Assembly (NCBI GenBank): GCA_047495785.1
Contig: JBLDXI010000003.1
Coordinates: forward strand, 1,550,001-1,614,000
Direction: 5' to 3'
Origin: Lepidodermella squamata
Lineage: Eukaryota > Animalia > Gastrotricha
DNA: 64,000 nucleotides
Made by a program: the position numbers and the translations under genes
Shown: one piece after another, positions 12,429 through 57,193 of the stretch
Position numbering within the stretch: the stretch's first letter is position 1
Layout of the letters: every line of letters begins with the position of its first letter
Notes under the pieces: model-generated
Databases searched by the model: none
Told to the model about the DNA's origin: nothing
Seen by the model: only the letters and a program-made list of their open reading frames with translations

Positions 12429-13079
12429 CCAAGTGCTAAATGTCGAAAGGCGAATTGCGCAATAGTATGAGTATCATGAGTATCATTTAGGAGTATCATA
12501 CATACGCTGATTATCAGCGTGAAAAACGGTTTTCTGAGCGAGCTGAAAACGAATATCTATCACAATAGCATCAGCATAATGTTGGTTGTTATCCGCGGCG
12601 TCAAAAATCATCAACTCCGCATAATGTGTACAATTTATTGCTAGAATTATGACCTGTCAAAATGAACTGATACTATGCTTAATTCCAAGATTACAATTAC
12701 AGCAAGTTTTATTCGAAGCTTCAGAACGTCAAATGACCAGGAATGGTCACTTTTCCACAGCTATATTGTTAGCATCTTTGAATAACTCAAAGTTGAGTTT
12801 TAATGAGTTGGCTTCAACCTTACATGAGCAATTTCAAATTCGATTTATTTAACGACGCAACTATATGTATATAGGTAATAGGGATGTTAGAAATGCATAA
12901 ATCAGCATAATCTCTAGTATATCACATTGGTATTATATTCGTATATAGACACAAAGTTGCTCTCTTGTCAAATGCAAGATAATATGATTGCCAAATATTT
13001 AAGCTGTTATTTGTCATCTCAAATGGCCACGGTAATAATAATAAGTAAGTGTGTATACTAGCATGCCGCCAAATGAAGT

Positions 13080-16000
13080 CTATGACTTGTTTGAACAAAG
13101 CGCGGCATACCTATTCCCACACGCATCTGTAAAACCAGCGCCGCCCCTGATACTCACGCCTAGGAAAATGAGAATATAGAAATTGACGCAGACATTTATT
13201 GGGAGCCTTACAGTTTTTACTAACGTCTTCGCTCGGCTCGCCTTGGGACCAAGCTACAACTGATTTATCCCTCGGTATTCCGTCGCCATTAAGCCAGACC
13301 CATGAGTAGGGAGGATGTTGCGCGCCGATATAGATACGGCTAACCGACTTCTGCTTCATCGCCGCTATTGCTTGAGCATACTTTTCTGGTAAACCTAGGT
13401 ACAGCATCGTCGAGCCGTCTTCGAGCACTGCGCAAGCCCCTTTGTTGTCAGCCCAATAATTCAACGCCTCGATCGGAAATGGAAATGACATCGCCCTGTT
13501 CCAGGATAAATTAAGTTAAGCGTCATTGACAGGAAAAGAACAGTGACTCACGTTTTGGCAGGCATTCACTTTTATTACCGACCTTGCACAGGAAACCGTC
13601 TGAAAGCCGGACCAGGATTCACTATATACCAACGCGAGGCCTGTGATAATCATGAAATGGAGAAAGGAAGAATGAGTGACATTTTCAAGAGCTTTACAAT
13701 AGCAGAATATAATAGGTATGTAGCCGGGTAACATTACTACTGGGTGAAATTGGATGTAGCGCTTACAGTCGCCACCGCTACCAGGTTCGCTTGGCAGCCA
13801 GCCAGGAGTTATCTGCGAGGCATTAGCATTGTCTGCCCAGTCCCAGACGAGCCGCGAATCGTCAAGCCACTGCCAATAGCGGGCGCCGCCGACCCACACA
13901 TTGGCGCCTTTAGCAGCAGCCACAGCAGCTGAAAATTCGTCCGATGTCTTTATCACCGCTAGCTCGGCCCCAAGGTTCCGGCAAGCTCGAAAGGATTCAG
14001 CAAATGTCAGAGCAGTTCCAGCAGCGTCAGCCAGGAAAAACTTGGGAGATACCACTAAATGGGAAACATGTGTTTGTAAATCCTCATTATTGCAGACTCA
14101 CCGCTACAATCGGAGCCTTTGAATCCGCTAGGGCAGTTGCAAGCACTGCTATTTCCAACGATCACACACGAACCGCCATTCAGGCAATTCATTGTGCATA
14201 AAACTGGGAAGGAAAAACTTATGGATTATCGTAATTAAAAATAACATGGGCCGTTATAGCTGGTTCTTAAATTGGACTGTTTACCTATATAATCCATGAA
14301 AAACATACCGTTCTCGCATAACGTCCCATTAAAGCCGGAAAAGCAGTCGCAAGTTCTTGTAACAGGATTATAAATACCGTTTACACATTGGAGCTGTCAA
14401 CAAATTCGATCCAATCACAACGCCTTAACAATCATAGCTGGGCAAGGAAATTTACTTTCTGAGCCAAGTCAGTTAGACAGCTGGCGTAGTTGCTAGCAAA
14501 ATCACGAGACGCCGAATATACGAGAAGCTGTTAAAGCAGTTCAAAGTCAAAGCAAAATAGGGAAATCTTTAACTCACTTGTTGCGATCCTGCAGGGCATT
14601 GACTATAGCAGAGATCGAGATTACCTGTTCGGCACCAGGCAGCGTACTGAAAAAGTGAATACGATCAACCCCCGAAAATGCCATAATAGATTGCGTCACT
14701 TAAATCTGTAAACTGTCACCTAAAATGAAATCGTCACTTAATCCTTTAATACGCCACCCAAACACGCAAACTGTCGCCGAAATGCGAGTTGCGTATACAA
14801 TATGCGCAAACGTGTCACCTAAAATGGATTTTTCGATTTTCAAGCATAGATGACTATTAAAAGCCAATCAAGTACCTTTCAAATTGATAGCTTAGGTTGT
14901 TTCGGTGATTTTCAGTGCTATATACTTTTCACAAAATCGGAAAATATTTCACAGAAATTTCACGAAATCACCTTGGGCTGAGTATAGAAAAAATTAGGCA
15001 ACATTTTGAAAATTTTCACCTGCGGGTCTGATAATAAAAATAAGCTCAAGTTTCAACTTCTTAGTGACAGTTTCCAGATTTTCAAGGACAAATTTACGGA
15101 TTTGTGTCGTTTTCGATGTTAAGGCGGCAATTTACAGATATCAAAGACGTTTTGCAGATTTGAGAGGCGATTTGTGGATTAAGTCTGCAGAATGCGCGCT
15201 TATGTTTACATTGTGAGCTTTAAGTGGCTCATGCGCGGTTTCTGCGTGCGCTCGTCCACTTTCTAGATGACGGTTATTTACCTTTTAAGTGACACAAACA
15301 CAGCCACCCCCTGAAAACGGCTCATCCATTCATCAATTTCATGAAAATGTTGCCTTATAACTAGGTATCCAAATTCACGAAAAGTCCCGAACCTAAGATC
15401 GAAATTTATGAAAATAGAGAAAGACTTCTGATTTCGCCAGCAAATTCTAACATTCCAAGCATTAAAATCGGAATATTATGGTCGACAAATTCCGAATATT
15501 GCGTAATCAGATGCCGCTGAAGTACTAGGAATACCTATATACTAATCGATTGCGCGTCAATAAAATCCACTCACCCATAATAGGCAGTTGGCTTTGTTTC
15601 GGTAGACGCCAGAAGAAAACTCTCCGGTTTCATTGGCGATGCAGCGCGAAGTGCTCAAACGGCAGGCAGTGAATTGACGAGTGACAGCGTTGAAGCAGCG
15701 GACGTGCGGTTTCACAGTGGCAGCAAGTTCGCCTGAATCGGAAATACAACAAACGTGCCTGAGGATTGTGATTATGAACTTACTGCTGATACTTCCCAGG
15801 CATGCCTCAAGGCTCGGAATCCCAACCGATTTCGCGAACTGTGATCGAGATAGCAATTACGAATCGACGAATTATTATAACAGTTTCTACCGTATCACTT
15901 GGACAGGGAATGATGCTTGGAACGCAGGTAACAAATTTTAGAGCCGAGTTGAAACACGTGTCGAATGTTCCACTCTACATTGATGATCATTCTAACCAAT

Positions 16001-17828
16001 GCCTATAAATATTTCACGTTTTTATACCTGCAAGGCGTTGAAATCTGTAGTACAAATCGCTAAATTCGACTTGAACGGAATATAGCCATTGTAAGAGCTT
16101 CCTATCTGGAAAACAGTAACAAAAATTTAGAAGAATAATGAAGAATTAAAAATTTAAGAAAAACGTGGCTTTGGAGTATTCTTCGCATTCGGTTGCGAGA
16201 ATGAAATTTTCCAGAAATGAAGTTATCAGAAAAAATTACCAGTCTATGCCGTCCGGAAAATCACCAAAAGTTTATGTACGACCCGCGATTTATATATACA
16301 TATATTATATGTACGAGCAGAAGGACTCATTAAAACTTAGGGTCGTTATATTCATAAGAACGCATCTTTTAACATTCGTCCTTAAGTGGCTTTCCGGTTA
16401 CATAATATTCGAAATTCTTTGACCATAATATTCTGCTTTTAAAGCTGAGTAAGAATCATGTGTCACCCAGAAGACCCAGATGACTTGGACAAATTTGCCT
16501 GCTAAAACACGAAATTAGGGTTGGAAAGCTAAGGAAACCTGAAATGTCCCGTACCTTAGATCGAACTATATGAAAATAGTTAAAGAGCCAGTTCCATGTA
16601 ATAAGCTTTTCTAGGTAGTTTTATTGAGTTGTCAAAATTGCGATTGTGGAGGTACAATTTTGACAACTCAAAAAACTATACCTTGAAAAGCTTATTAGAA
16701 AAAAAGAAAAGAATATTTTCTTTCTTGAATGACTTCTTAATCGATTTTCAAATGGTACTTCGATGAAGCCTGTAGACAATTCTAGATTCTGGAATTTTTT
16801 TACAAAGTTGCATACCTTTCTGTTGTCAAAACTGTACCGCTCACCGGTAAAAAACGCGTAGTTATTTAAGCAGGAATATAACGACCTCAAATTTGATGGC
16901 AAAATCTGGAGTTTCTCCCTATTTTCATCAAGTTGGATCTAAGGTTCAGGACCTTTTAGGTTTCCTGAGCTTTCCAACCCTAATTTCATGTTTTTGCCAT
17001 CAAATTTGAAAAGTCCAAGTTATCTCAGCTTCCTGGGTGAGATATGATTCTTACTCAGTTTTAAAAGCTGAATATTATGGTCGAAAAATTTCGAATATTA
17101 CGTAAGCGGAAAGCCGCTTAAGTACGAATATCAAATAACGCGTACTTATTTAAGTACGAATATCAAAAAATGCGTACTTATTTAAGTATGAATATAAAAA
17201 AAACGCGTACTTATTTAAGCAGGAATATAACGACCCTAAAAATTAATACGTTACAAAAAATTAAAAAAAGGGTTGTGCAACTTGAAGGACATGCCGTATA
17301 AGAGCAGTTGATGAGATAATTCAGTGGATTCTGCTGATTTTAAAACTTGTTTAGAAAGTCGAAAAAGGTAAAATTGCATAAATAAATTTAGCCGATATTT
17401 TAAATGTTTTGTTATTAACTTTATGTAAATAACTAACCATGACTTCAGTATTTTTGCTGCATCCAGGTGAGCCCGGTCGACAAGTCGCTGCGTTGGTGTC
17501 ATATCTGTAGCACAATCTTGCAGTCTAGAAGGAAAGAAATCCAGCTTAAAGCCGAATTGAAATATGCAAATAGCCTACAGCCTTCAAACAGCTGCTTTGA
17601 TCAGAAATGCTGCTTCCAACCTGACCAAAATGAACAAAAAATGAAACATTCCAGCAATTTTTATGTATCAACTTGATATTCGCGTAGTTGCTGGCAGCCG
17701 CTCGGCAGTTCGCGGCAATTTATGAATGTGTCGTCGAATTGTGAGAAACAGCGAGCCCAGTCACCGCAAATAGGCACCCATTCGCTGGCCGATAAGAATA
17801 AAATCGCAATGACAAAGAAGTCTTGCAT
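13080..17828 (-). CDS. Secreted Cys-repeat / 2x EGF / 2x C-type lectin-domain protein, paralog A (about 15 exons; probable frameshift in the penultimate exon)
   Basis: Signal MQDFFVIAILFLSASE. Short exons give Cys-rich repeats (RCFSQFDDTFINC, TCFNSALKFVTC, RCFNAVTRQFTAC), EGF motifs (CDCFSGFNGTLCE, CLNGGSC..CNCPSGFKGSDC) and CTLD motifs (ACRNLGAELA, VWVG, WLPSEP). Exon structure matches paralog B. The phase-0 join near 13495 meets a stop unless one base is removed. Confidence 0.75.
16340..17236. mobile_element. Mutator-like foldback MITE in a lectin A intron
   Basis: Termini GGGTCGTTATATTC / GAATATAACGACCC with long imperfect arms. 9-bp TSD TAAAACTTA / TAAAAATTA. Three 32-bp tandem repeats at 17118-17219. 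Absent from the matching intron of paralog B. Confidence 0.75.
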
Positions 17829-17848
17829 TTTTCTGAGAACAAATAATA

Positions 17849-19241
17849 GGTTCGCCATACTTTTCTCAACCGTACTTTTCTCAACAGTGTATATCGTTCT
17901 CAACATGCAACTACTCAACCCGCATTTTTCTCAACATGCATCTGTTGTACGCCTATAAGGGATTTAAGCCTTTAGGGTATGAGCATTGTATATAACCAAA
18001 ATAATGGCCAAACCGTGAGGGTCACAGTCGATCATCATATATCAATCGATTGTTGTAATCAAGGGCTATCGATTGGTGCCAAATCGAATTCCGCGCGGAA
18101 CTTCTGGAAATATTATTTCTGCCTTCAAAGTTAAAAAAATGCAAAAAATTCGGTTTTTGAGGCCAAAACTTGACCCTGAATGTGCCACGTGGAATTCGAT
18201 TTGGCACCAATCGATAGCCCTTGATTACAGCAATCGATTGATATATGATAATCGATTGTGACCCTCACAGTTTGGCCGCTATGACAGTTTAAAATATCGC
18301 TTATCCCGTATAGGCATACCTAAGCCTATACCGTATAGCTTAGATCCTCTAAAGGCGTACAACACATATAAGACCCCGCCTTTCGGTCCCCTCTTCAGAG
18401 CACCTTTCACTGCGTGCGGTCCGCCACCTTCACAACACTACTCCCGTCTTTTCTGAGCGCTCTTATAATCCCACGGTGTCGGGTAACTTGGCCTTAAAAA
18501 CCAAAATAAGCCAAATATTTGATTATGAGTTGAGTAAAACGGAAAAGCAATAAACACCAAGTGGTCCAAGCAAATATGGCTTAGGGCTTAGGGGCTTAGG
18601 ATCGAAATTATTTGAAAAATTTACCTGTGAAATTCATGCGCATTTAAAATAATGCACCTATAATCGAAATATCGAATTCATTTCGGGGCAACAATTCTGG
18701 CGGAGGCTAGATTTTAATTCAGCATTCAACATGCAGACTATTTAACGCGACCCGAATGACGACAGGCTTAGACACATTTTAATTTTGGCACAAAAATTCC
18801 TAGAATAAGTACTCAGTCTTGGACATTACCGCGCGCAGTACAGAATTAAAGCGTTTCCTATATAAACTCCGATTTTTCAAGATTACAGAAAGGAAGTGCA
18901 CAAATTTTCTGATTTTTGCCAATTTTTCTTGTCACTTTTGACTAGCTGAGTACCCAAAAATTGTCAAATTGCGCAGTACAAAGTACAAAGTCAACAAAGT
19001 CAATAATAATTAACATTTTGAATTATTACCAGACTGTTTACCCTCTTAAGAAGGACAATCATGTCGATTGGGGTCCAATAGTAACAAGACTATTAGACTG
19101 GAGAGGCATTCGCATGCGCCCCCGCATCGCCGGGGCTCACGCTCGCGCGTAAAGTTGAGAAACACACCTGTTGTGTAAACAACACGTTGAGAAAACTACA
19201 TGATGTTGAGAAAAGTATGGTTGAGAAAAGGCGGCACTACC
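17849..19241. mobile_element. Non-autonomous TIR element (Merlin-like by GG termini and 8-bp TSD), inserted 20 bp upstream of the lectin A ATG
   Basis: TSD AAATAATA at 17841-17848 and 19242-19249. Subterminal TTTTCTCAAC repeats are inverted at the two ends. The empty site is visible in paralog B at about 55930-55945. Confidence 0.75.
17943..18364. mobile_element. Foldback MITE nested in the 17849-19241 element
   Basis: Outer IR TGTTGTACGCC / GGCGTACAACA and a near-perfect inner palindrome at 18006-18277. Confidence 0.7.
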
Positions 19242-19249
19242 AAATAATA

Positions 19250-19624
19250 AATAATTTTTCATGTTTTGAAAAACGCCCAGGAAGAACGAGATCACCGACA
19301 GCGTCACATGGCCGAACAATTTTCACACGCACGTGTTTATTGGATGTTTTTCTCGAATTTTATTTTACACACGCTTCCAAATCCGATAAACAACCCCATA
19401 CTCGTCACGTGCTATTTTTCGAGTTACTGCGTGCTCGAAAATCAAATCGCCGGTTGCTTAACGGACTTGGAAGCGTGTGTAAAATAAAATTCGAGAAAAA
19501 CATCCCATACTAACCACGTGCGTGTGAAAATTGTTCGGCCATGTGACGCTGTCGGTGATCTCGTTCTTCCTGGACGTTTTTCAAAATATGCCAAATTATT
19601 TATTATTTGTTCTCAGCAAAATGC
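19250..19624. repeat. Long palindrome upstream of lectin A; the left arm continues at 17824-17848 and includes the ATG
   Basis: Arms of about 165 bp are nearly perfect and surround a spacer of about 70 bp; several CACGTG motifs. Confidence 0.8.
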
Positions 19625-20035
19625 GATATTGTTGAATCGTGGCAAAGTCAAGACAATTGCAATCAAAATTTGACTTGCGAAATAAAACGAAATTTTTTTT
19701 TTTTAAACCTTCGATAAAATTTGGCTTTCGTCCTAAAAAGAGGAACAATAATTGCCAAAGCTTCGCCCGAGCAATCTGGATCGGGAGGTGAATTTTGGGG
19801 AATATAGGGAGAATGTAGGAGCACACCTTGAGTTTCTTTTTAAATAGGCGAAGGAACTTGGACACATTTCCCAAATTTGCGGAATTTTCCATGAAACGAC
19901 ATTTACGACCTACGACCTATTGAAAGTCAGTCGAATCGATCGAAATAGCCCTATCCGTCCAGACCTGCACATGCGAAGTGTATAATTTTTGTGTTTCAAA
20001 GCTGTCGCGCTGAAAAGCTGAATTACTGCATGATC

Positions 20036-20486
20036 TGAATTTTGAGTTTTGTTTGAGTTTAGACTGACTGTTTGTGGGTGATACCAGTGAGAAAGGATCT
20101 CAGGGATCTGCAAAAAAGCATTATTTAAAAATGACGAAATTTTTGGCATTTCCTCCAAATCTTAATCCAGCCATCTTAATAATCGAATATTGTATAATAT
20201 GAACAAGGGACTGACAGCAATAGCGACTACAGCTCGACGGACATATCCATTGTTTACAGTTTATTCTCCTAAAAATTATGACCTGTCAAAATGAACTAAT
20301 GTGGAAAATATTTCCGCTGCTTATTTATATCTGTAATATCTGTAATATTTCCGGCAAGTTACAAAATCATGCGATGGATGCAGATGCAGATATTATTTAG
20401 CCATCGTTATCCTGCTTAATCACGCCTAAATGAGAGTCCCTAAAACGAGATTTACCCCGCAGCCTACGAATTTTTTGCCTCACGTT
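20036..20486. repeat. Duplicated non-coding block (second copy about 47506-47938)
   Basis: Collinear matches such as GGACATATCCATTGTTTACAGTTT, AAAATTATGACCTGTCAAAATGAACTAAT and GCAGCCTACGAATTTTTT. Confidence 0.75.
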
Positions 20487-21330
20487 TAAACGCTAGCTAA
20501 AGCTACACATAATGGGGCGTATGTTGGAACCTTCCTTATGTTGGATTAAGGTTCAAGTTTCAAGTTTTCCTCTCATTTTCAAAGCAACCATTGTTGCGTA
20601 TTGGGACTGACCATTGTTCGCGTATATAAAACGGAGCAATAGAAAAAAATTCCTATGTTCGATTGAAAAACCTAGGTGCAAAAGAGAGGAAATTTTCAGG
20701 TTTAGAAGGTTTATCCGCTAAACCTGGTTTAAACCAAGAATATTGCAAACCATGTACGAGGAGGTTTACAAAAAAACGGGTATTACGGCCCAACCGGCGG
20801 ATGGCGCGCCTTGTGGAGCCATTGCTCGATGGCGCGGTATTCAAAATTTCGAAAGTTAAAAATTATTATATTATATTATTATTCATTCAATAATATCTAC
20901 ATTTTCAGCTGCTATATTACTCGCACAATTACTCGACGGTCCCGCCCAATTGGTTTGCGATCGGTCTAAGAGAAAAGTTTTCTGCGTTGAATTTATAGCA
21001 AAAAAAGTATGAAGTATTCAATCGCTAATTTCATTTATAATCGGCGAACGCTCGGGTACGCTTATTATTATTAATTTTTCCACGCTCAGGACCGTTGGCA
21101 AATTAATATTTTCAGGCATTGAATATTATATATTACTGTCCCCAATCCGCCCCCACGCCAAATAATAAATAAACTTAAATTGCCCTAGTTTATTTTGTTA
21201 CGATTACGTCATTTGAGGTGAAGTGAGAAATGAGGTCATAATCGTGTTGTGATTTTTCAGAATTTTAGAGACAAAAATTCGGGTTGCCCCCACTTGCCCC
21301 CAAATGATAAAGCGTTGAAAATTCAGTAAT

Positions 21331-51367: not shown

Positions 51368-51841
51368 AATAGTCCTCTTTCATTCAAATCGTTAAATTTA
51401 AATTGACTGAAATCCATGATTAACTTTATTTGCTCCCGCTATCATTATCGCTATAAAATTACGACCTGTCAGCATGAACGGATACCATGCTCCATTTCAT
51501 ATGTTATTCTTTAAGTAAGTTTTATTCGAAGCTTTCAGCGTTATAAGACCAGCAGGAATGGTCACTTTTCCGAAGCTATAATATTGTTAGCATGTTTGAA
51601 TTATTTTAGCGAGTTAAGTTTCAATTAGTAGGCTTCAACTTTACGTGAACAATTTCAACTCCGATTATTTAACGACGCAATAATAAGTAAATAGGGCGAA
51701 TTAGGCTTATGTTAGAAGTGCATGAATCAGCAATATCATCGCATTATTGCTAGTTTCCGGCTATCACATATAATGAGAAGGCAAAGTCTCTTTCCGGTCT
51801 TTCAGAAAAGTGATCTTCACGGGAACGCCGCCAAATAAAGT

Positions 51842-54800
51842 TTATGGCTTGTTTGAACAGAGCACCGCATGGGAAGAAAGACAATCGTCCGACATAGCAT
51901 AACCGTTCACGATACTCACACCTAGGAAAACGAGAATGTAGGAATCAAAGTAGAACATTTTCGGGAGCCTTACAATTTTTTTCAATACTGTCCTCAGGCT
52001 TGCCGCCGGCCCAACTTACAACTGAGTTATCCTTCGGTATTTGTTGCCATTTAAGCGTGACGTATTCTTGGGGAGGACGAAACGCGGCGATGAAGATACG
52101 ATTAATAGATTTCTCCTTCATCAAGGCTATTGCTTGAGCATACCGTTCTGGGGTAGTTAGGTAAGCTATCGGTGAATCCTCATAATCATACTGAGTCTCA
52201 TCGGGCGGGCATTGCGTGCCCGGCGCGGAGAAGTAAATGACACTGCCCTGTTCGTGAATAAATAAGCGTCATCAACGGCAGAGGAACAATGACTCACGTT
52301 TCGGCAAAGAGCCACATTCGCTGCTTGGCTGTCTTCACAATCAATCACTATATAACCGGACCAACGGGGGCTATATACCAGCCCAACGCCTGTAATTTAC
52401 AAAAGGGCAAAAAAGTAATGGTAGATGGCATTTTTACGAGCTTAGCAATAGCATACAGGACAAAATTGAACCCTGATCATCAATGATCAAGTTTCATAGC
52501 TCATAGTCATTTTTATCTTATGTCAAAATGAATATGTAACTGCCTTCCATCTGTGACTTCTGCGTGAAGTGTTTGCCCAAGAGGATTAAAGGGGGATAAA
52601 GGACGACGATTAGTGCACTTGCTGAAGAAAAATCGCAACCTTTCCAACTTTAACCACTTACCCTGCATTCGCTCATGTGAGCCAATTCATAAAAGGCCCT
52701 GCCCTTTATTACAGCTCTGTCCTATATTTTTGTCCTGCCTATAATTCGTAAAATACGGAATATTATATATTATCAAAATGCTACCATCAGCACCATCGAA
52801 AATCCCTGAAGGCCGATTTACCTACATTTCTAACCCTTTATTTACCTGTTTGAACAATTTTGAAATGAATCTAATTATAATGAATGAATCCCCGGTTTCA
52901 ACAGACAACTTTTTGCCGATTTCGTGGAGAATAACTGATTTTCTGCCCTTTTTCGGAGCTGATTCACGCCAACCTAAAGAGCCCCTATCTCGTTGTAGCA
53001 GCCCTCATGGCTGAACAGGCTGTACCTTTACATGTTTTAGAAGATGCTGAAAAAAATGTCGTCGCCACAGGTGTCAAACCTGGAGGTCAGCATTTTTGGT
53101 GAGCACCTCGACGATTCATCAGACGGTTTGAAAATTAGTGACGCTGTTAAGAAGTCATTTCGCTTTCGAATTATTCTGATAATTTCGAATTCCAATTACC
53201 CTGGTCAGCTGGTGTTGCGCAACTTTCTTATATTTCGAAATGTATAAAAATGACATCATTGGCCCCATTTAATGGCAATTTGTCTTAGAATAGCTGATTT
53301 AGCAGGATACGCCACCCCTGAGAACTGCCGACTGACCATCAGGTAGAAATCTTGCTCAGCTACCGGATTACGGCATCTGGTGAACCCCTGACCCTGAGGT
53401 AACCTTGCCCCTACGAGAAACGAGAAACATGTGAGCGATAGGTCACTAAGAAGGCCTTAGTACTTAGTGTAACACAGTTTTCAGTAAAGTTAGAATTAGC
53501 GCGCTTACATGTGGAAATCCCTGGTTGGAATGGTAAATACCAGCCAGGATATGTCTGCGAGGCATTACCATCTGCTGCCACGTCCCAGGTAAAACGCGTC
53601 CCATCAAACCAAAGCCACATGCGGGTGCCGCTGATCCAAACGTTAGCGCCATTAGCAGCAGCCACTGCTGCTGCAAATTCGTCACGTGTCATTATGTCCG
53701 CTAGCTCAGCACCAAGGTTCCGACACGCTTGAATGGATTCAAGAAATCCGAGAGCACCAGCGCTCTCAGCCAGGAAGTACTTGGGAAGTACCACTAAATG
53801 GGAAACAGTTTTTAACTCCAGTTGTCATGTGTTTGTAAATCCTCATCATTGCTGACTCACCGCTACAATCTGAGCCATTGAATCCACGAGGGCAGTTGCA
53901 AGTGCTGATATTTCCAACGACCACACACGTACCGCCATTCTGGCAGTTCAATGTGCATAAAACTGGGAGGGAAAAACGAAATGATTATCGTAATCAAACG
54001 TTATTGCTGGTTCTTAATCTGGGCTGTTTACCAACATAAAACCTATGAAGAACATACCGTTCTCGCATAATGTCCCATTGAAGCCGGAAAAGCAGTCGCA
54101 AGTTCTTGTCACAGGGTTATAAATGCCATTTACACATTGGAGCTGTCAACAAATTCGATACAATCACGCCGCCTTAACAATAATAGCAGAGCAAGGAAAT
54201 TTACTTTCTGAGCCAGGTCTGTCATGCAGCTGGCGTAGTTGCTAGCAAAGTCGCGAGACGCAGAATATACGAGAATCTGTTGAAAAATTCCAAGGTCAAA
54301 GCAAAAAAAAAAACGGGCATTTATTGACAAACTCGTTGGGATCCTGTAGGGCATTGACTGTAACAGAGATCGACACTACCTGTTCGGCACCAGGCAGCGA
54401 ACTGAAAAAGACTTACGATTAAAGGCATATCACAAAGTTGATATTACACTGAATAATATGGCAAAGCTTTTATTATTAAAAGTAAAACACTATATCGAAT
54501 GAGAAATGAGGGAAATAAACACCGCGTCCGTTTCAGGCTGATTTGTAGGAATTAGCAGAATCCTTTAGTTTGATGATGGTCCATGGTCTACTCTAAATCC
54601 CTTTTCTCTATATGAACGCAAAGCGCGTCAAATAAGTGTACTCACCCATAATAGGCAGTTAGCTTTGTTTCGGTAGACGCCGGGCGAAAACTCTGCGGTT
54701 TCATTGGCGATGCAGCGCGAAGTGCTCAAACGGCAAGCTGTGAATTGACGAGTGACAGCGTTGAAGCAGCGGATGTGCGGTTTCACAGCGGCAGCATATT

Positions 54801-55919
54801 CGCCTGCAACGGGAATACAATAACATGCTTGAGGAATGTGATTATCAACTTACTATTGATACTTGCCAGGCATGCTTCAAGGCTCGGAATCCCAACCGAT
54901 TTCGCGAACTGTGATCAAGTTTGCGATTACGAATCGACAATTTGTTATTAAAGTTTCTATACCGTATCACTTGGACAGAGAATGCTGCTTGGAACGCAGG
55001 TAACAAACTTTTGAGCCGAGTTGAAACACGTGTCAAATGTTCCATTCTACGCATTTGTGATCATTCTAACCAATGCTTATAAATAATCAGCTGTTTTGTA
55101 CCTGGAAGGCGTTGAAATCTGTAGTGCAGCTCGCTAAATTTGACTTGAACGGAATAAAGCCATTGTAAGAGCTTCCTATCTGGAAAACAGAACCAAACCT
55201 CATATAGGAATAAGGAAGAAACATGTTAGAATAATATGGCTTTCTTATCAGCGCCTTGAATTTGTTTTGATTTGAGATTTACAGCTTAGAATTTAAATGA
55301 CGGACCTCTTTCAATCAATCGAAATTGTCTAGTTTAATATTAAATCTAATTTAATTGAAAAATGGCTGTGCACAATAATAGACATGTCGTAAAAAACCGT
55401 TGATGAGACAATTCAGAGGATTCCGTGTTGATTTCGAAATTAGGAAATTATCGAAAAAGGTAGAATGGCATGAATCAAGTTCGCCGAATTTTAAACTATT
55501 TGTTATAATCTTGATGTAAAAAACTCACCATAACTTCGGTGGTTTTGCTGCATCCAGGTGAGCCCGGTCGGCAAGTCGCTGCGTTGGTGTCATATCTGTA
55601 GCACAATCTAGCAGTCTACCAGGAAAAACATCCATCTAAAAGCCGAATCGATATGCAAAAATAGCATACAGCCTTCAAACAACTGCTTTGATCAGAAATG
55701 CTGCTTCCAACCTGACCAAAAATGAACAAAAACAATGAATTATTCGGGCAATTGTTTCGAATTAACTTGATATTCGCGTAATTGCTGGCAACCGCTCGGT
55801 AACTCGCGGCAATTGATGAACGTGTCGTCGAATTGTGAGAAGCAGCGAGCCCAGTCGCCGCAAAGCACGCATTCGCTGGTCGATAGGAATACAATCACAA
55901 TCGCGAAAAAATCTCGCAT
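51842..55919 (-). CDS. Secreted Cys-repeat / 2x EGF / 2x C-type lectin-domain protein, paralog B (apparently intact)
   Basis: Signal MRDFFAIVIVFLSTSE. Exon-by-exon homology with paralog A with conserved splice sites; the checked exons join in frame to SNKP-stop. Confidence 0.78.
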
Positions 55920-56322
55920 TTTTCGCTCAGAAAAATGATAAATAATTCCGATTTTTCAAAAGCGTCCAGGAAAAATGAAATTGGTTAAAAAATCCAAGCA
56001 TGGCACGGCTTAACAATTGTCGCACGTGCGTGACTAACGGATGTTTTTCTCGAATTGAATTTTTACACGCTTCCAAGTCCGTTATTCGTCACGTGCTATT
56101 TTTTGAAGAGGCAGCAGCTTTTCTCCCAACCGGCAATTTGATTTCCGAGCACGCGAAAAAATGGCACGTGGTGAGTGGGTTGTTTATCGGATTTGGAAGA
56201 GTGTGAAATACTTGTCGAGAAAAACATCCGGTGGTCGCATGTGACGCTATAGCGGTGATCTCATTCTTCCTAGACGTGTTTTAAAAATTCCAAATTATTT
56301 ATTTTTTTTTCAGCAAAATGCG
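55915..56322. repeat. Degenerate palindrome upstream of lectin B, homologous to 17824-19624
   Basis: Same arms, including the CAG-AAAATGC ends; the central core is in the opposite orientation to paralog A. Confidence 0.75.
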
Positions 56323-56696
56323 ATATTATCAAAGTGCTGGCAAAGTCAAGAAGGTTGCAATAAAAATTCAATTTCCTTTACAACTTCAAACTTCAACACT
56401 GGGCAGAAATTTCCTACTTTTTTTACTCGGTAGTTTACTCGGTCAAACAAAGGTGTTTGATAACTGATAAGAGAGATTGCAGGCTCATCGCATCCTGGTC
56501 GACCAGACCGCGACGCTTCGGCGGACTTCGGTCGTAACATGAATATGAGTTGTTCCGAAAATTTTATAATCCATTTTCGGCCATCAGGTCCGCAGTCCGC
56601 ACATTTCTCCGCGCTGAGGATAACATTTCGAGTATATTATTATAAATCATTTAAAGGAAAGGAAACAAAACAAAACGAAAGTAAGCTGAACCAGCA

Positions 56697-57193
56697 GCAC
56701 ATTTTCCGGACCGCCGGTGTTTCCTCCGCGCGCGCGCTCCCAATGGTAGGCTCGTTTTACGCGTAAATACGCCTCGCTCGCATTTATTGCGCAACAAATA
56801 ATTGCAGACTTCCCTCGCGCGCCCAAGAAAGTGTACAAGTCCGAAATTCAGGAGAATAAGGGCGCGCTAGGGGTTGGATATGCGTGGTGCGTGGTAATTT
56901 TCTTATTTTCGCTTTTTCAACCTTTTAAATTCTTATGGCCGGTGTTTCTGGATACGAACAGAGAAGTCATCAAATAAGGGCGTCATGATGCGGTCAATTT
57001 TGTTGTCGCATTAACAAAACCAAACATCCTTTATATTTTTTTCTTCGGAAAGCATGCAGCATGCTTGCCTTAAACTTAGCGCACGAGTGCGCGCGCGCGG
57101 GGAAGGCTATAATTATCTTGAATTGTTGCGCAATAATCCCCAACCAATAGGAGCGCGCGCGCGGAGGAACCACCGGCGGGCCGGAAAATGTGC
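56697..57193. mobile_element. Mutator-like MITE
   Basis: TIRs GCACATTTTCCGG..GCGCGCGCTC and 9-bp TSD GAACCAGCA / GAAACAGCA; a solo end of the same family lies at about 3248-3290. Confidence 0.75.

What the first reader, a model, noticed from the sequence alone, without database searches (positions are those of the whole stretch)
17824..19624. Lectin start codon lies in a palindrome arm, and the palindrome core is flipped between paralogs
Seen: in both genes the 5' leader and ATG (TTCTCAG-AAAAATG in A) form the tip of one arm of a 400-bp inverted repeat, with a mirror ATG at the other tip (19621; 56318). The core reads GCGTGCTCGAAAATCAAATCGCCGGTTG on the plus strand in A but as its approximate reverse complement in B (about 56128-56156), although gene and outer flank keep the same orientation. 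The arms in A are far more like each other than like B. Inference: arm-to-arm recombination inverts and homogenises an E-box-rich promoter. This could be an invertible switch on a recognition gene, or a MITE that donated the promoter and start.
Basis: partly seen in the sequence, partly recalled or inferred. Interest (0 to 1): 0.75.

Follow-up and report, generated by a model that had tools for sequence, protein, structure and literature searches.

The report
Palindromic lectin promoter with flipped centre
Two neighbouring copies of a lectin gene in a small invertebrate each begin inside a roughly 400-base palindrome whose middle points opposite ways in the two copies; this is real, but it looks like the ordinary behaviour of inverted repeats, not a proven genetic switch or a jumping element.

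Summary
Genes A (ATG 17828, minus strand) and B (ATG 55919, minus strand) are old tandem paralogues with EGF and C-type lectin domains (dS about 0.39). Each start codon lies at the tip of an inverted repeat, and a mirror ATG sits at the far tip (19621; 56318).

- **Core orientation.** The 28-base core occurs exactly twice in the 121-Mb genome, on the plus strand in A and the minus strand in B. Arm-specific markers flip with it, so at least 100-120 bp are truly inverted while the tips and flanks stay collinear.
- **Arm similarity.** A's arms are 94% alike, B's 70%, and A versus B 74-85%. A's arms were therefore homogenised after the duplication.
A's gene-side arm is split by a 1,393-bp transposon with an 8-bp target duplication. 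That is why the interval spans 1.8 kb.
- **Not a MITE.** The palindrome has no other copies and no target duplication, and its gene-side tip runs 10 bases into the coding sequence. About 10 of 30 paralogues without any palindrome share the ATGCG start. CACGTG at about -100 to -300 is typical of this family's promoters.

Best reading: an inverted duplication of the gene's own promoter, followed by arm-to-arm conversion and one repeat-mediated inversion. Whether it still flips could not be tested, because no other assembly was reachable. Interest is modest.

The parts
12640..17828 (-). Lectin gene A (signal-peptide exon 1, Cys-rich exons, EGF, C-type lectin domain); ATG at 17828-17826
   Evidence: ORFs. 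Pfam EGF (E=1e-5) and Lectin_C (E=9e-6). Collinear with gene B in five BLAST blocks. The four exons examined are open; dN/dS versus B is 0.35.
17825..17848 (.). Outer 24 nt (tip) of the gene-side arm of palindrome A, holding the leader and ATG; cut off from the rest of the arm by a transposon
   Evidence: Inverted repeat I6: 17825-17848 / 19601-19624, 96% complementary.
17849..19241 (+). 1,393-bp non-autonomous DNA transposon (GGTTCGCC...GGCACTACC) inserted into the arm. 8-bp target duplication AAATAATA at 17841-17848 and 19242-19249. Carries a nested ~420-bp high-copy MITE at about 17942-18364.
   Evidence: At least three other copies with the same ends and their own 8-bp duplications: GATTCGAA at C34, ACTCTGAG/ACTCCGAG at C32. 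Those copies lack the nested MITE, which has dozens of copies of its own. The undisrupted right arm shows the empty site.
19250..19395 (.). Remainder of the gene-side (left) arm of palindrome A
   Evidence: the repeat finder I2 and I3; self-reverse BLAST 19241-19609, E=2e-110.
19396..19451 (+). Spacer of palindrome A. It holds most of the 28-nt core, which spans 19429-19456 and so runs about 5 nt past the spacer's right edge (the arm boundary is approximate); plus-strand orientation.
19452..19624 (.). Distal (right) arm of palindrome A, ending in the mirror ATG (19621) followed by a stop after 4 codons
19370..19468 (.). Minimum segment of A that is inverted relative to B (inner-arm markers plus spacer)
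   Evidence: Markers CCAAATCCGATAAAC(AACCC) versus CCAAGTCCGTTA group A-left with B-right and A-right with B-left. The tip marker groups by position.
19625..19670 (.). About 46 bp of distal flank still homologous between A and B (83%). The duplicated unit ends here.
   Evidence: BLAST 19540-19670 versus 56238-56368; no similarity beyond.
51450..55919 (-). Lectin gene B, paralogue of A; ATG at 55919-55917
55910..56327 (.). Palindrome B, uninterrupted. Gene-side arm about 55910-56105, spacer about 56106-56154, distal arm about 56155-56327, mirror ATG at 56318. The arms reach 10 nt into the coding sequence (ATGCGAGATT / ATGCGATATT).
   Evidence: the repeat finder I2-I4; alignments; IR -61..+10 relative to the ATG.
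56127..56154 (-). 28-nt core in B, in the opposite orientation to A
   Evidence: Whole-genome pattern search: only two hits, plus strand in A and minus strand in B.
56023..56170 (.). Three CACGTG boxes of B, at -109 and -176 (gene-side arm) and -251 (distal arm). A has them at 19330, 19406 and 19515, which was about -106, -182 and -291 before the transposon arrived.
   Evidence: Family-wide enrichment of CACGTG at -119 to -303.

Best explanation
This is a locus-specific palindrome, probably made by an inverted duplication of the lectin gene's own proximal promoter. That origin is inferred.

- The gene-side arm is probably the native promoter and leader. It carries the family-typical CACGTG boxes at about -100 to -180 and the ancestral ATGCGA start.
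- The distal arm is an inverted copy of about 190 bp that reaches 10 nt into the coding sequence. This is why a useless mirror ATG exists.
- The event happened once, in the common ancestor of genes A and B, after they split from their nearest paralogues and before the A/B duplication.

Later events (the first three follow from the sequence comparison; the last is inferred):
1. The central 100-120+ bp (spacer plus inner arms) was inverted in one lineage, by exchange or replication template switching between the arms.
2. The arms of copy A were homogenised by arm-to-arm conversion, while the arms of copy B decayed.
3. A DNA transposon landed in A's gene-side arm 13 bp upstream of the ATG. It pushed the rest of the palindrome and all three E-boxes 1.4 kb away.
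4. The orientation difference is most likely a fixed, one-off and probably near-neutral rearrangement, since the element is nearly symmetric.
For: - Single-locus element. Whole-genome DNA and pattern searches find the palindrome, its invariant 15-mer and its 28-mer core only at A and B.
- Paralogues. None of the 30 nearest family members examined has an inverted repeat near its ATG or any similarity to the arms. About 10 of them start with ATGCG.
- Outer edge. The palindrome's proximal end is inside the coding sequence at +10, and there is no target-site duplication.
- Family promoter feature. CACGTG runs at 0.97/kb in -500..-1 of 29 paralogues against 0.24/kb further upstream (my binomial estimate from those counts, p about 0.002; not a tool result), all at -119..-303. 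B's gene-side arm has boxes at -109 and -176.
- Inversion. The core orientation differs. Two inner-arm SNP markers plus an indel co-segregate with the core, while a tip marker and both flanks stay positional.
- Homogenisation. AL-AR 94% versus BL-BR 70% and A-B 74-85%, with dS(A,B)=0.39.
- Transposon. Same ends and 8-bp duplications at other copies.
- Known mechanism. Inverted-repeat arm homogenisation and spacer inversion by template switching or recombination are documented (PMC8604942; PMC8327919; PMC3723533). Fold-back and template-switch inverted duplications are documented too (PMC3907307; PMC7954356).
Against: - No outgroup or second assembly could be reached. So the polarity of the inversion, its fixation and the order of events are not shown.
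- Upstream regions of paralogues are too diverged to prove that the gene-side arm is the ancestral promoter. That rests on the E-box position and the shared start.
- Informative sites in the arms are few (1 positional, 2 inverted, plus indels), so the breakpoints are only bracketed between about 8-35 and about 165 nt from the tips.
- No transcript data exist, so 'promoter' is an inference.
- Some blocks are unusually conserved: the 15-mer GGATGTTTTTCTCGA in all four arms, and the core at 26/28. This could mean function beyond a neutral relic, although by my own rough estimates the significance is marginal (p about 0.04-0.07).
Confidence: 0.68

Rival explanations
1. A working invertible regulatory element. 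The arms recombine repeatedly in the germ line or soma, so each locus exists in both orientations and the orientation changes expression of the lectin gene.
For: The two paralogues show the two orientations with collinear flanks. A's arms are kept 94% alike, which shows that arm-to-arm exchange has been going on. The core is 26/28 conserved. The gene belongs to a family of at least 150 members with a fast-evolving lectin domain (dN/dS 0.58).
Against: One orientation per locus in the only assembly, and no alternative haplotig for this locus. No recombinase domain in the eight longer neighbouring ORFs scanned. B's arms are only 70% alike with arm-specific indels, a poor substrate. A's gene is now separated from the element by a 1.4-kb transposon. 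The element is nearly symmetric, so flipping changes little. None of 30 other family members examined has such an element. One inversion in dS about 0.39 of divergence is enough to explain the data.
Confidence: 0.05
2. A MITE or foldback transposon inserted just upstream of the ancestral gene and supplied its promoter, leader and start codon.
For: The shape fits: about 400 bp, long terminal inverted repeats, AT-rich tips. The genome is rich in MITEs, and one sits nested 100 bp away.
Against: No other copy in 121 Mb, even of 15-28-nt conserved blocks. No target-site duplication. The proximal terminus lies inside the coding sequence. The ATGCG start is shared by paralogues without the element. 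E-boxes at this distance are a family-wide promoter feature.
Confidence: 0.06
3. No inversion took place. The ancestor was a longer, perfect palindrome carrying the 28-mer in both arms, and A and B lost opposite copies.
For: Both copies carry arm-specific deletions: about 42 nt in A's distal inner arm, and 23 nt and 9 nt in B's arms.
Against: B has no trace of a mirrored 28-mer; the sequence opposite it is unrelated. The arm-specific markers (A/G, A/T and the AACAACCC indel) travel with the 28-mer's side in both copies. Inversion predicts that; differential loss does not.
Confidence: 0.05
4. Assembly artefact: the centre of one palindrome was mis-oriented by the assembler.
For: Palindromes are error-prone in assemblies, and A's arms are 94% identical.
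Against: The arms are only about 170 nt, well within a long read. The assembly is 151 contigs for 121 Mb. B's arms are 70% alike, so they are unambiguous. The A and B copies differ by many substitutions throughout, so neither is a collapsed copy of the other.
Confidence: 0.03

Closest known systems
Inverted-repeat arm homogenisation and spacer inversion by template switching or intrachromosomal recombination (Ripley-type quasipalindrome correction; yeast survey PMC8604942)
   Same: Two imperfect arms become alike within a locus, and the spacer is found in opposite orientation in homologous sequences while the flanks stay collinear. No dedicated recombinase is needed.
   Different: The documented short-repeat cases have arms of 7-16 bp and spacers of 2-5 bp. 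Here the arms are about 170 bp, the spacer about 50 bp, and the inverted tract includes inner-arm sequence. The comparison is between old paralogues, not strains.
Large sex-chromosome palindromes of mammals (PMC8327919, PMC3723533)
   Same: Arm-to-arm gene conversion keeps the arms more alike than expected from their age. Inversions via the arms occur, and genes sit in or at the arms.
   Different: Those are 10 kb to Mb arms holding whole genes at over 99% identity. This one is 0.4 kb, holds only a promoter and 10 nt of coding sequence, and one of its two copies has stopped converting.
Fold-back or template-switch inverted duplications (PMC3907307, PMC7954356)
   Same: An inverted copy lies next to its source, separated by a short unique spacer, with no target duplication.
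   Different: Origin here is inferred from the end state only. The size (about 190 bp) lies between the short-range (tens of bp) and large (kb-Mb) classes described.
Bacterial invertible promoters (fim-type or hin-type phase variation)
   Same: A promoter-bearing segment bounded by inverted repeats is seen in two orientations next to a surface or recognition gene.
   Different: Those use short repeats plus a site-specific recombinase, and both orientations coexist in a population. Neither was found or testable here, and here the arms themselves are the promoter.
MITEs and foldback elements
   Same: Size, and a shape dominated by long terminal inverted repeats.
   Different: Single locus, no target duplication, and the terminus lies inside a coding sequence.

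Membership tests
MITE / foldback transposon | Multiple dispersed copies in the genome | tested here: not met
   Only loci A and B were hit by DNA searches with either palindrome. The exact 15-mer occurs only in the four arms, and the 28-mer only twice.
MITE / foldback transposon | Target-site duplication flanking the terminal repeats | tested here: not met
   The flanks of B (CGCGAAAA | ATCAAAGT) share no duplication. The proximal end lies inside codons 1-4 of the gene.
MITE / foldback transposon | Absent from paralogous 'empty' sites, with element-borne sequence foreign to the gene | tested here: not met
   The paralogues do lack the palindrome, but the tip sequence ATGCGA is present in them as their own start. 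So the tip is gene-derived, not foreign.
Inverted-repeat-mediated spacer inversion with arm homogenisation | Spacer in opposite orientation between homologous copies while the outer flanks are collinear | tested here: met
   Core on the plus strand in A and the minus strand in B. The gene side and the 46-bp distal flank are collinear.
Inverted-repeat-mediated spacer inversion with arm homogenisation | Breakpoints inside the arms (arm markers flip with the spacer, tips do not) | tested here: met
   Two SNP markers plus an indel group A-left with B-right. One tip marker groups by position. The sites are few.
Inverted-repeat-mediated spacer inversion with arm homogenisation | Arms within a copy more alike than orthologous arms between copies | tested here: met
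   Met in A (94% versus 74-85%) but not in B (70%). dS(A,B)=0.39.
Invertible promoter switch (phase variation) | Both orientations coexist at one locus in a population or individual | not testable with these tools
   No reads and no second assembly. The protein searches gave no close relatives.
Invertible promoter switch (phase variation) | Dedicated recombinase encoded nearby | tested here: not met
   No Pfam domain in the eight longer ORFs scanned, which lie within about 3 kb distal of palindrome A and within or about 1 kb distal of palindrome B. A recombinase acting in trans is not excluded.
Invertible promoter switch (phase variation) | Orientation changes expression | not testable with these tools
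   No transcript data.
C-type lectin gene (the host gene) | Lectin_C domain above the Pfam threshold | tested here: met
   PF00059, 26.8 bits against a cut-off of 22.6. An EGF domain scores 26 bits against 21.5 in the adjacent exon.

The most novel reading that the evidence does not exclude
The palindrome is a live, recombinase-independent flip element. Arm-to-arm exchange inverts its centre at an appreciable rate in the germ line or soma, and the orientation tunes a bHLH (CACGTG)-driven promoter of a recognition lectin. That would be an animal counterpart of bacterial phase variation, within a gene family of at least 150 members. A second unexcluded reading is that read-through transcription of the ~165-bp-stem hairpin yields small RNAs acting on the gene's 5' end.
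Probability: 0.04. Interest if true: 0.8.

Novelty: new member of a known kind. Interest (0 to 1): 0.27.

Why it matters
This is a clean, datable small-scale example of the life cycle of a promoter palindrome:
- birth by inverted duplication of a gene's own 5' end;
- arm homogenisation in one daughter copy and decay in the other;
- a repeat-mediated inversion;
- disruption by a transposon.

It shows that a start codon lying in a palindrome arm need not imply a mobile-element origin. It also yields a testable family-wide promoter feature: CACGTG at about -120 to -300 in a lectin family of at least 150 genes. It would matter much more only if both orientations proved to coexist and to differ in expression.

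Tried and rejected
- **Orthologues or other individuals.** The search for homologous proteins with exon 1 of B found nothing. The search of protein representatives with the lectin exon gave a best hit of only 33% identity. So no other assembly could be fetched, and polymorphism and polarity stay untested. G000 has no relatives in the genome collection.
- **MITE hypothesis.** Rejected on copy number, missing target duplication and the ancestral start.
- **A family-wide habit of palindromic starts.** Rejected: 0 of 30 other paralogues examined.
- **Structured RNA gene.** Rfam gave nothing above threshold in 17000-20500. The only strong sub-threshold hit is the nested MITE's hairpin.
- **Divergent gene driven by the mirror arm.** No conserved ORF. 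The mirror ATG is followed by a stop after 4 codons in A, and by a 49-aa ORF with no Pfam match in B.
- **Mirrored exon 1 beyond the distal tip.** Similarity ends about 10 nt after the ATG.
- **Differential loss instead of inversion.** Rejected on marker co-segregation.
- **Trans-splice acceptor at TTCTCAG.** Other paralogues show no consistent AG just before the ATG, so this was left open.
Full report
**Setting.** The window is G000:C3:1550001-1614000 of a 121-Mb, 151-contig assembly. Earlier notes of this scan call the organism an unidentified, short-intron, small freshwater invertebrate. I did not verify that. The closest protein in a 1.84-billion-protein library is only 33% identical, so no relatives were available.

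**The genes.**
- Gene A (minus strand, ATG 17828-17826, exons down to about 12640) and gene B (minus strand, ATG 55919-55917, down to about 51450) are collinear paralogues in five BLAST blocks of 69-87% identity.
- The exons encode a signal peptide plus a Cys-rich N-terminus, an EGF domain and a C-type lectin domain (Pfam).
- Over the four exons compared, dS=0.39 and dN/dS=0.35. The lectin exon is the fastest, at 0.58. All four exons are open in both genes.
- Exon 1 defines a family with at least 150 hits in this genome.
Exons were handled one by one, by reference.

**Checking the observation.**
- In A, 17825-17848 pairs with 19601-19624 (24 nt, 96%), and 19241-19395 pairs with 19452-19609 (93-95%) around a 56-nt spacer.
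- In B, the repeat runs from 55910 to 56327.
- Both gene ATGs and the mirror ATGs (19621; 56318) sit at the arm tips.
- As single-stranded DNA, palindrome A folds to -168 kcal/mol (z=-34) and B to -87 kcal/mol (z=-8.5).
- A degenerate pattern for the 28-nt core hits the 121-Mb genome exactly twice: plus strand at 19429-19456 and minus strand at 56127-56154, with zero control hits.

- The 1.8-kb span of the finding exists because A's gene-side arm is interrupted by a 1,393-bp element (17849-19241).
- Other genomic copies at C4, C34 and C32 share exactly the same ends (GGTTCGCC...GGCACTACC). The C34 and C32 copies have 8-bp target duplications of their own. Here AAATAATA is duplicated at 17841-17848 and 19242-19249.
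- The intact right arm shows the empty site.
- The element carries a nested, high-copy MITE of about 420 bp that the other copies lack.
- Only 13 bp of original upstream sequence now adjoin A's ATG. The E-boxes moved from about -106, -182 and -291 to more than 1.5 kb away.

**How much is inverted.** I aligned the four arms tip-to-centre.
- Near the tip, the one clean informative site groups by position (A-left with B-left, A-right with B-right).
- Near the centre, two SNPs and an indel (CCAAATCCGATAAACAACCC versus CCAAGTCCGTTA) group A-left with B-right. In both copies the 28-mer lies next to the same arm type.
- So at least 19370-19468 in A and 56076-56193 in B are inverted relative to each other.
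- The breakpoints lie inside the arms, somewhere between about 8-35 and about 165 nt from the tips.
- The alternative of opposite losses from a larger perfect palindrome fails. B has no mirrored 28-mer, and the markers co-segregate with the core.

**Homogenisation.**
- Arm identities are AL-AR 94%, BL-BR 70%, AL-BL 74%, AR-BR 84.5%.
- Both copies have the palindrome at the same place with both flanks homologous, so it predates the duplication (dS 0.39).
- Without conversion, A's arms should differ at least as much as A differs from B. They differ by only 6%. A's arms have therefore been converted since the duplication; B's have not.

**Origin.**
- The element is not mobile. It has no other copies and no target duplication.
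- Its proximal end lies 10 nt inside the coding sequence (ATGCGAGATT mirrored as ATGCGATATT in B).
- Thirty other paralogues have no inverted repeat near the ATG and no similarity to the arms. About 10 of them begin ATGCG. The start codon therefore belongs to the gene and was copied into the distal tip, not donated.
- CACGTG is four times enriched in -500..-1 of 29 paralogues (0.97 versus 0.24 per kb). All 14 boxes lie at -119 to -303. B's gene-side arm carries boxes at -109 and -176.
- The gene-side arm thus looks like the native family-type promoter, and the distal arm like its inverted copy.
- A two-switch template-switch or fold-back event would give exactly this layout: copy, short unique spacer, source (PMC3907307, PMC7954356). 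This step is inference.

**Mechanism and function.**
- Arm homogenisation and spacer inversion are the documented behaviour of inverted repeats, by template switching or recombination (PMC8604942; large-palindrome examples PMC8327919, PMC3723533).
- No neighbouring ORF that was scanned has a recombinase domain, or any other Pfam domain.
- With one assembly, I can only say that each locus has one orientation. One inversion in the whole A-B history suffices to explain the data.
- The element is nearly symmetric, so the flip changes little.
- Some blocks are strikingly conserved: GGATGTTTTTCTCGA is invariant in all four arms and otherwise absent from the genome, and the core is 26/28. They may be binding sites, but by my own rough estimate the significance is marginal (p about 0.04-0.07).

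**Verdict.** The recombination and homogenisation inference is supported. The MITE idea is rejected. The switch idea is untested and unlikely. This is a new example of a known kind of repeat dynamics, of modest interest.

Noticed in passing
G000 genome-wide; window 17670-17828 (-) as query: Exon 1 (signal peptide plus CG-W-RCFSQFDD-F--CR-LP-GC--L-EYQ) has at least 150 hits in the genome, often in clusters on C4, C34, C26, C30, C64 and C73. The lectin exon's best match in 1.84 billion protein representatives is only 33% identical. This is a large, lineage-specific EGF/C-type-lectin family.
   Followed up: partly
Upstream 500 bp of 29 paralogues (loci L019-L060): CACGTG is enriched fourfold in the proximal promoter (0.97/kb versus 0.24/kb further upstream). 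All 14 boxes lie at -119 to -303, several as CACGTGCG. This is a candidate shared bHLH-type control element of the family.
   Followed up: partly
G000:C33:2482752-2484453: The ~420-bp MITE nested in the transposon occurs here as four head-to-tail copies spaced about 424 bp apart. That is a MITE turned into a short tandem array.
   Followed up: no
window 16354-17149: A's long intron, absent from B (B joins 55243 to 55358), holds an inverted pair 16354-16579 / 16919-17149 (83%) around a small palindrome at 16599-16697. It is probably another MITE-like insertion. A 32-33-nt tandem repeat lies at 17118-17230.
   Followed up: no
window 56697-56750 / 57140-57193: A GC-rich inverted repeat (54-nt arms, 91%, with (GC)n cores) lies 0.4 kb beyond palindrome B. 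It is unrelated to the palindrome.
   Followed up: no
window 52306-53540: Gene B carries about 1 kb of extra sequence between the two lectin-domain blocks that A lacks (A 13560-13798). It is probably an intronic insertion.
   Followed up: no
window 17849-19241 and copies at C4:2286023, C34:672745, C32:2191578: A non-autonomous DNA transposon family with GGT...ACC ends, subterminal GTTGAGAAAAG repeats and 8-bp target duplications (hAT-like by duplication length). No autonomous partner was looked for.
   Followed up: partly
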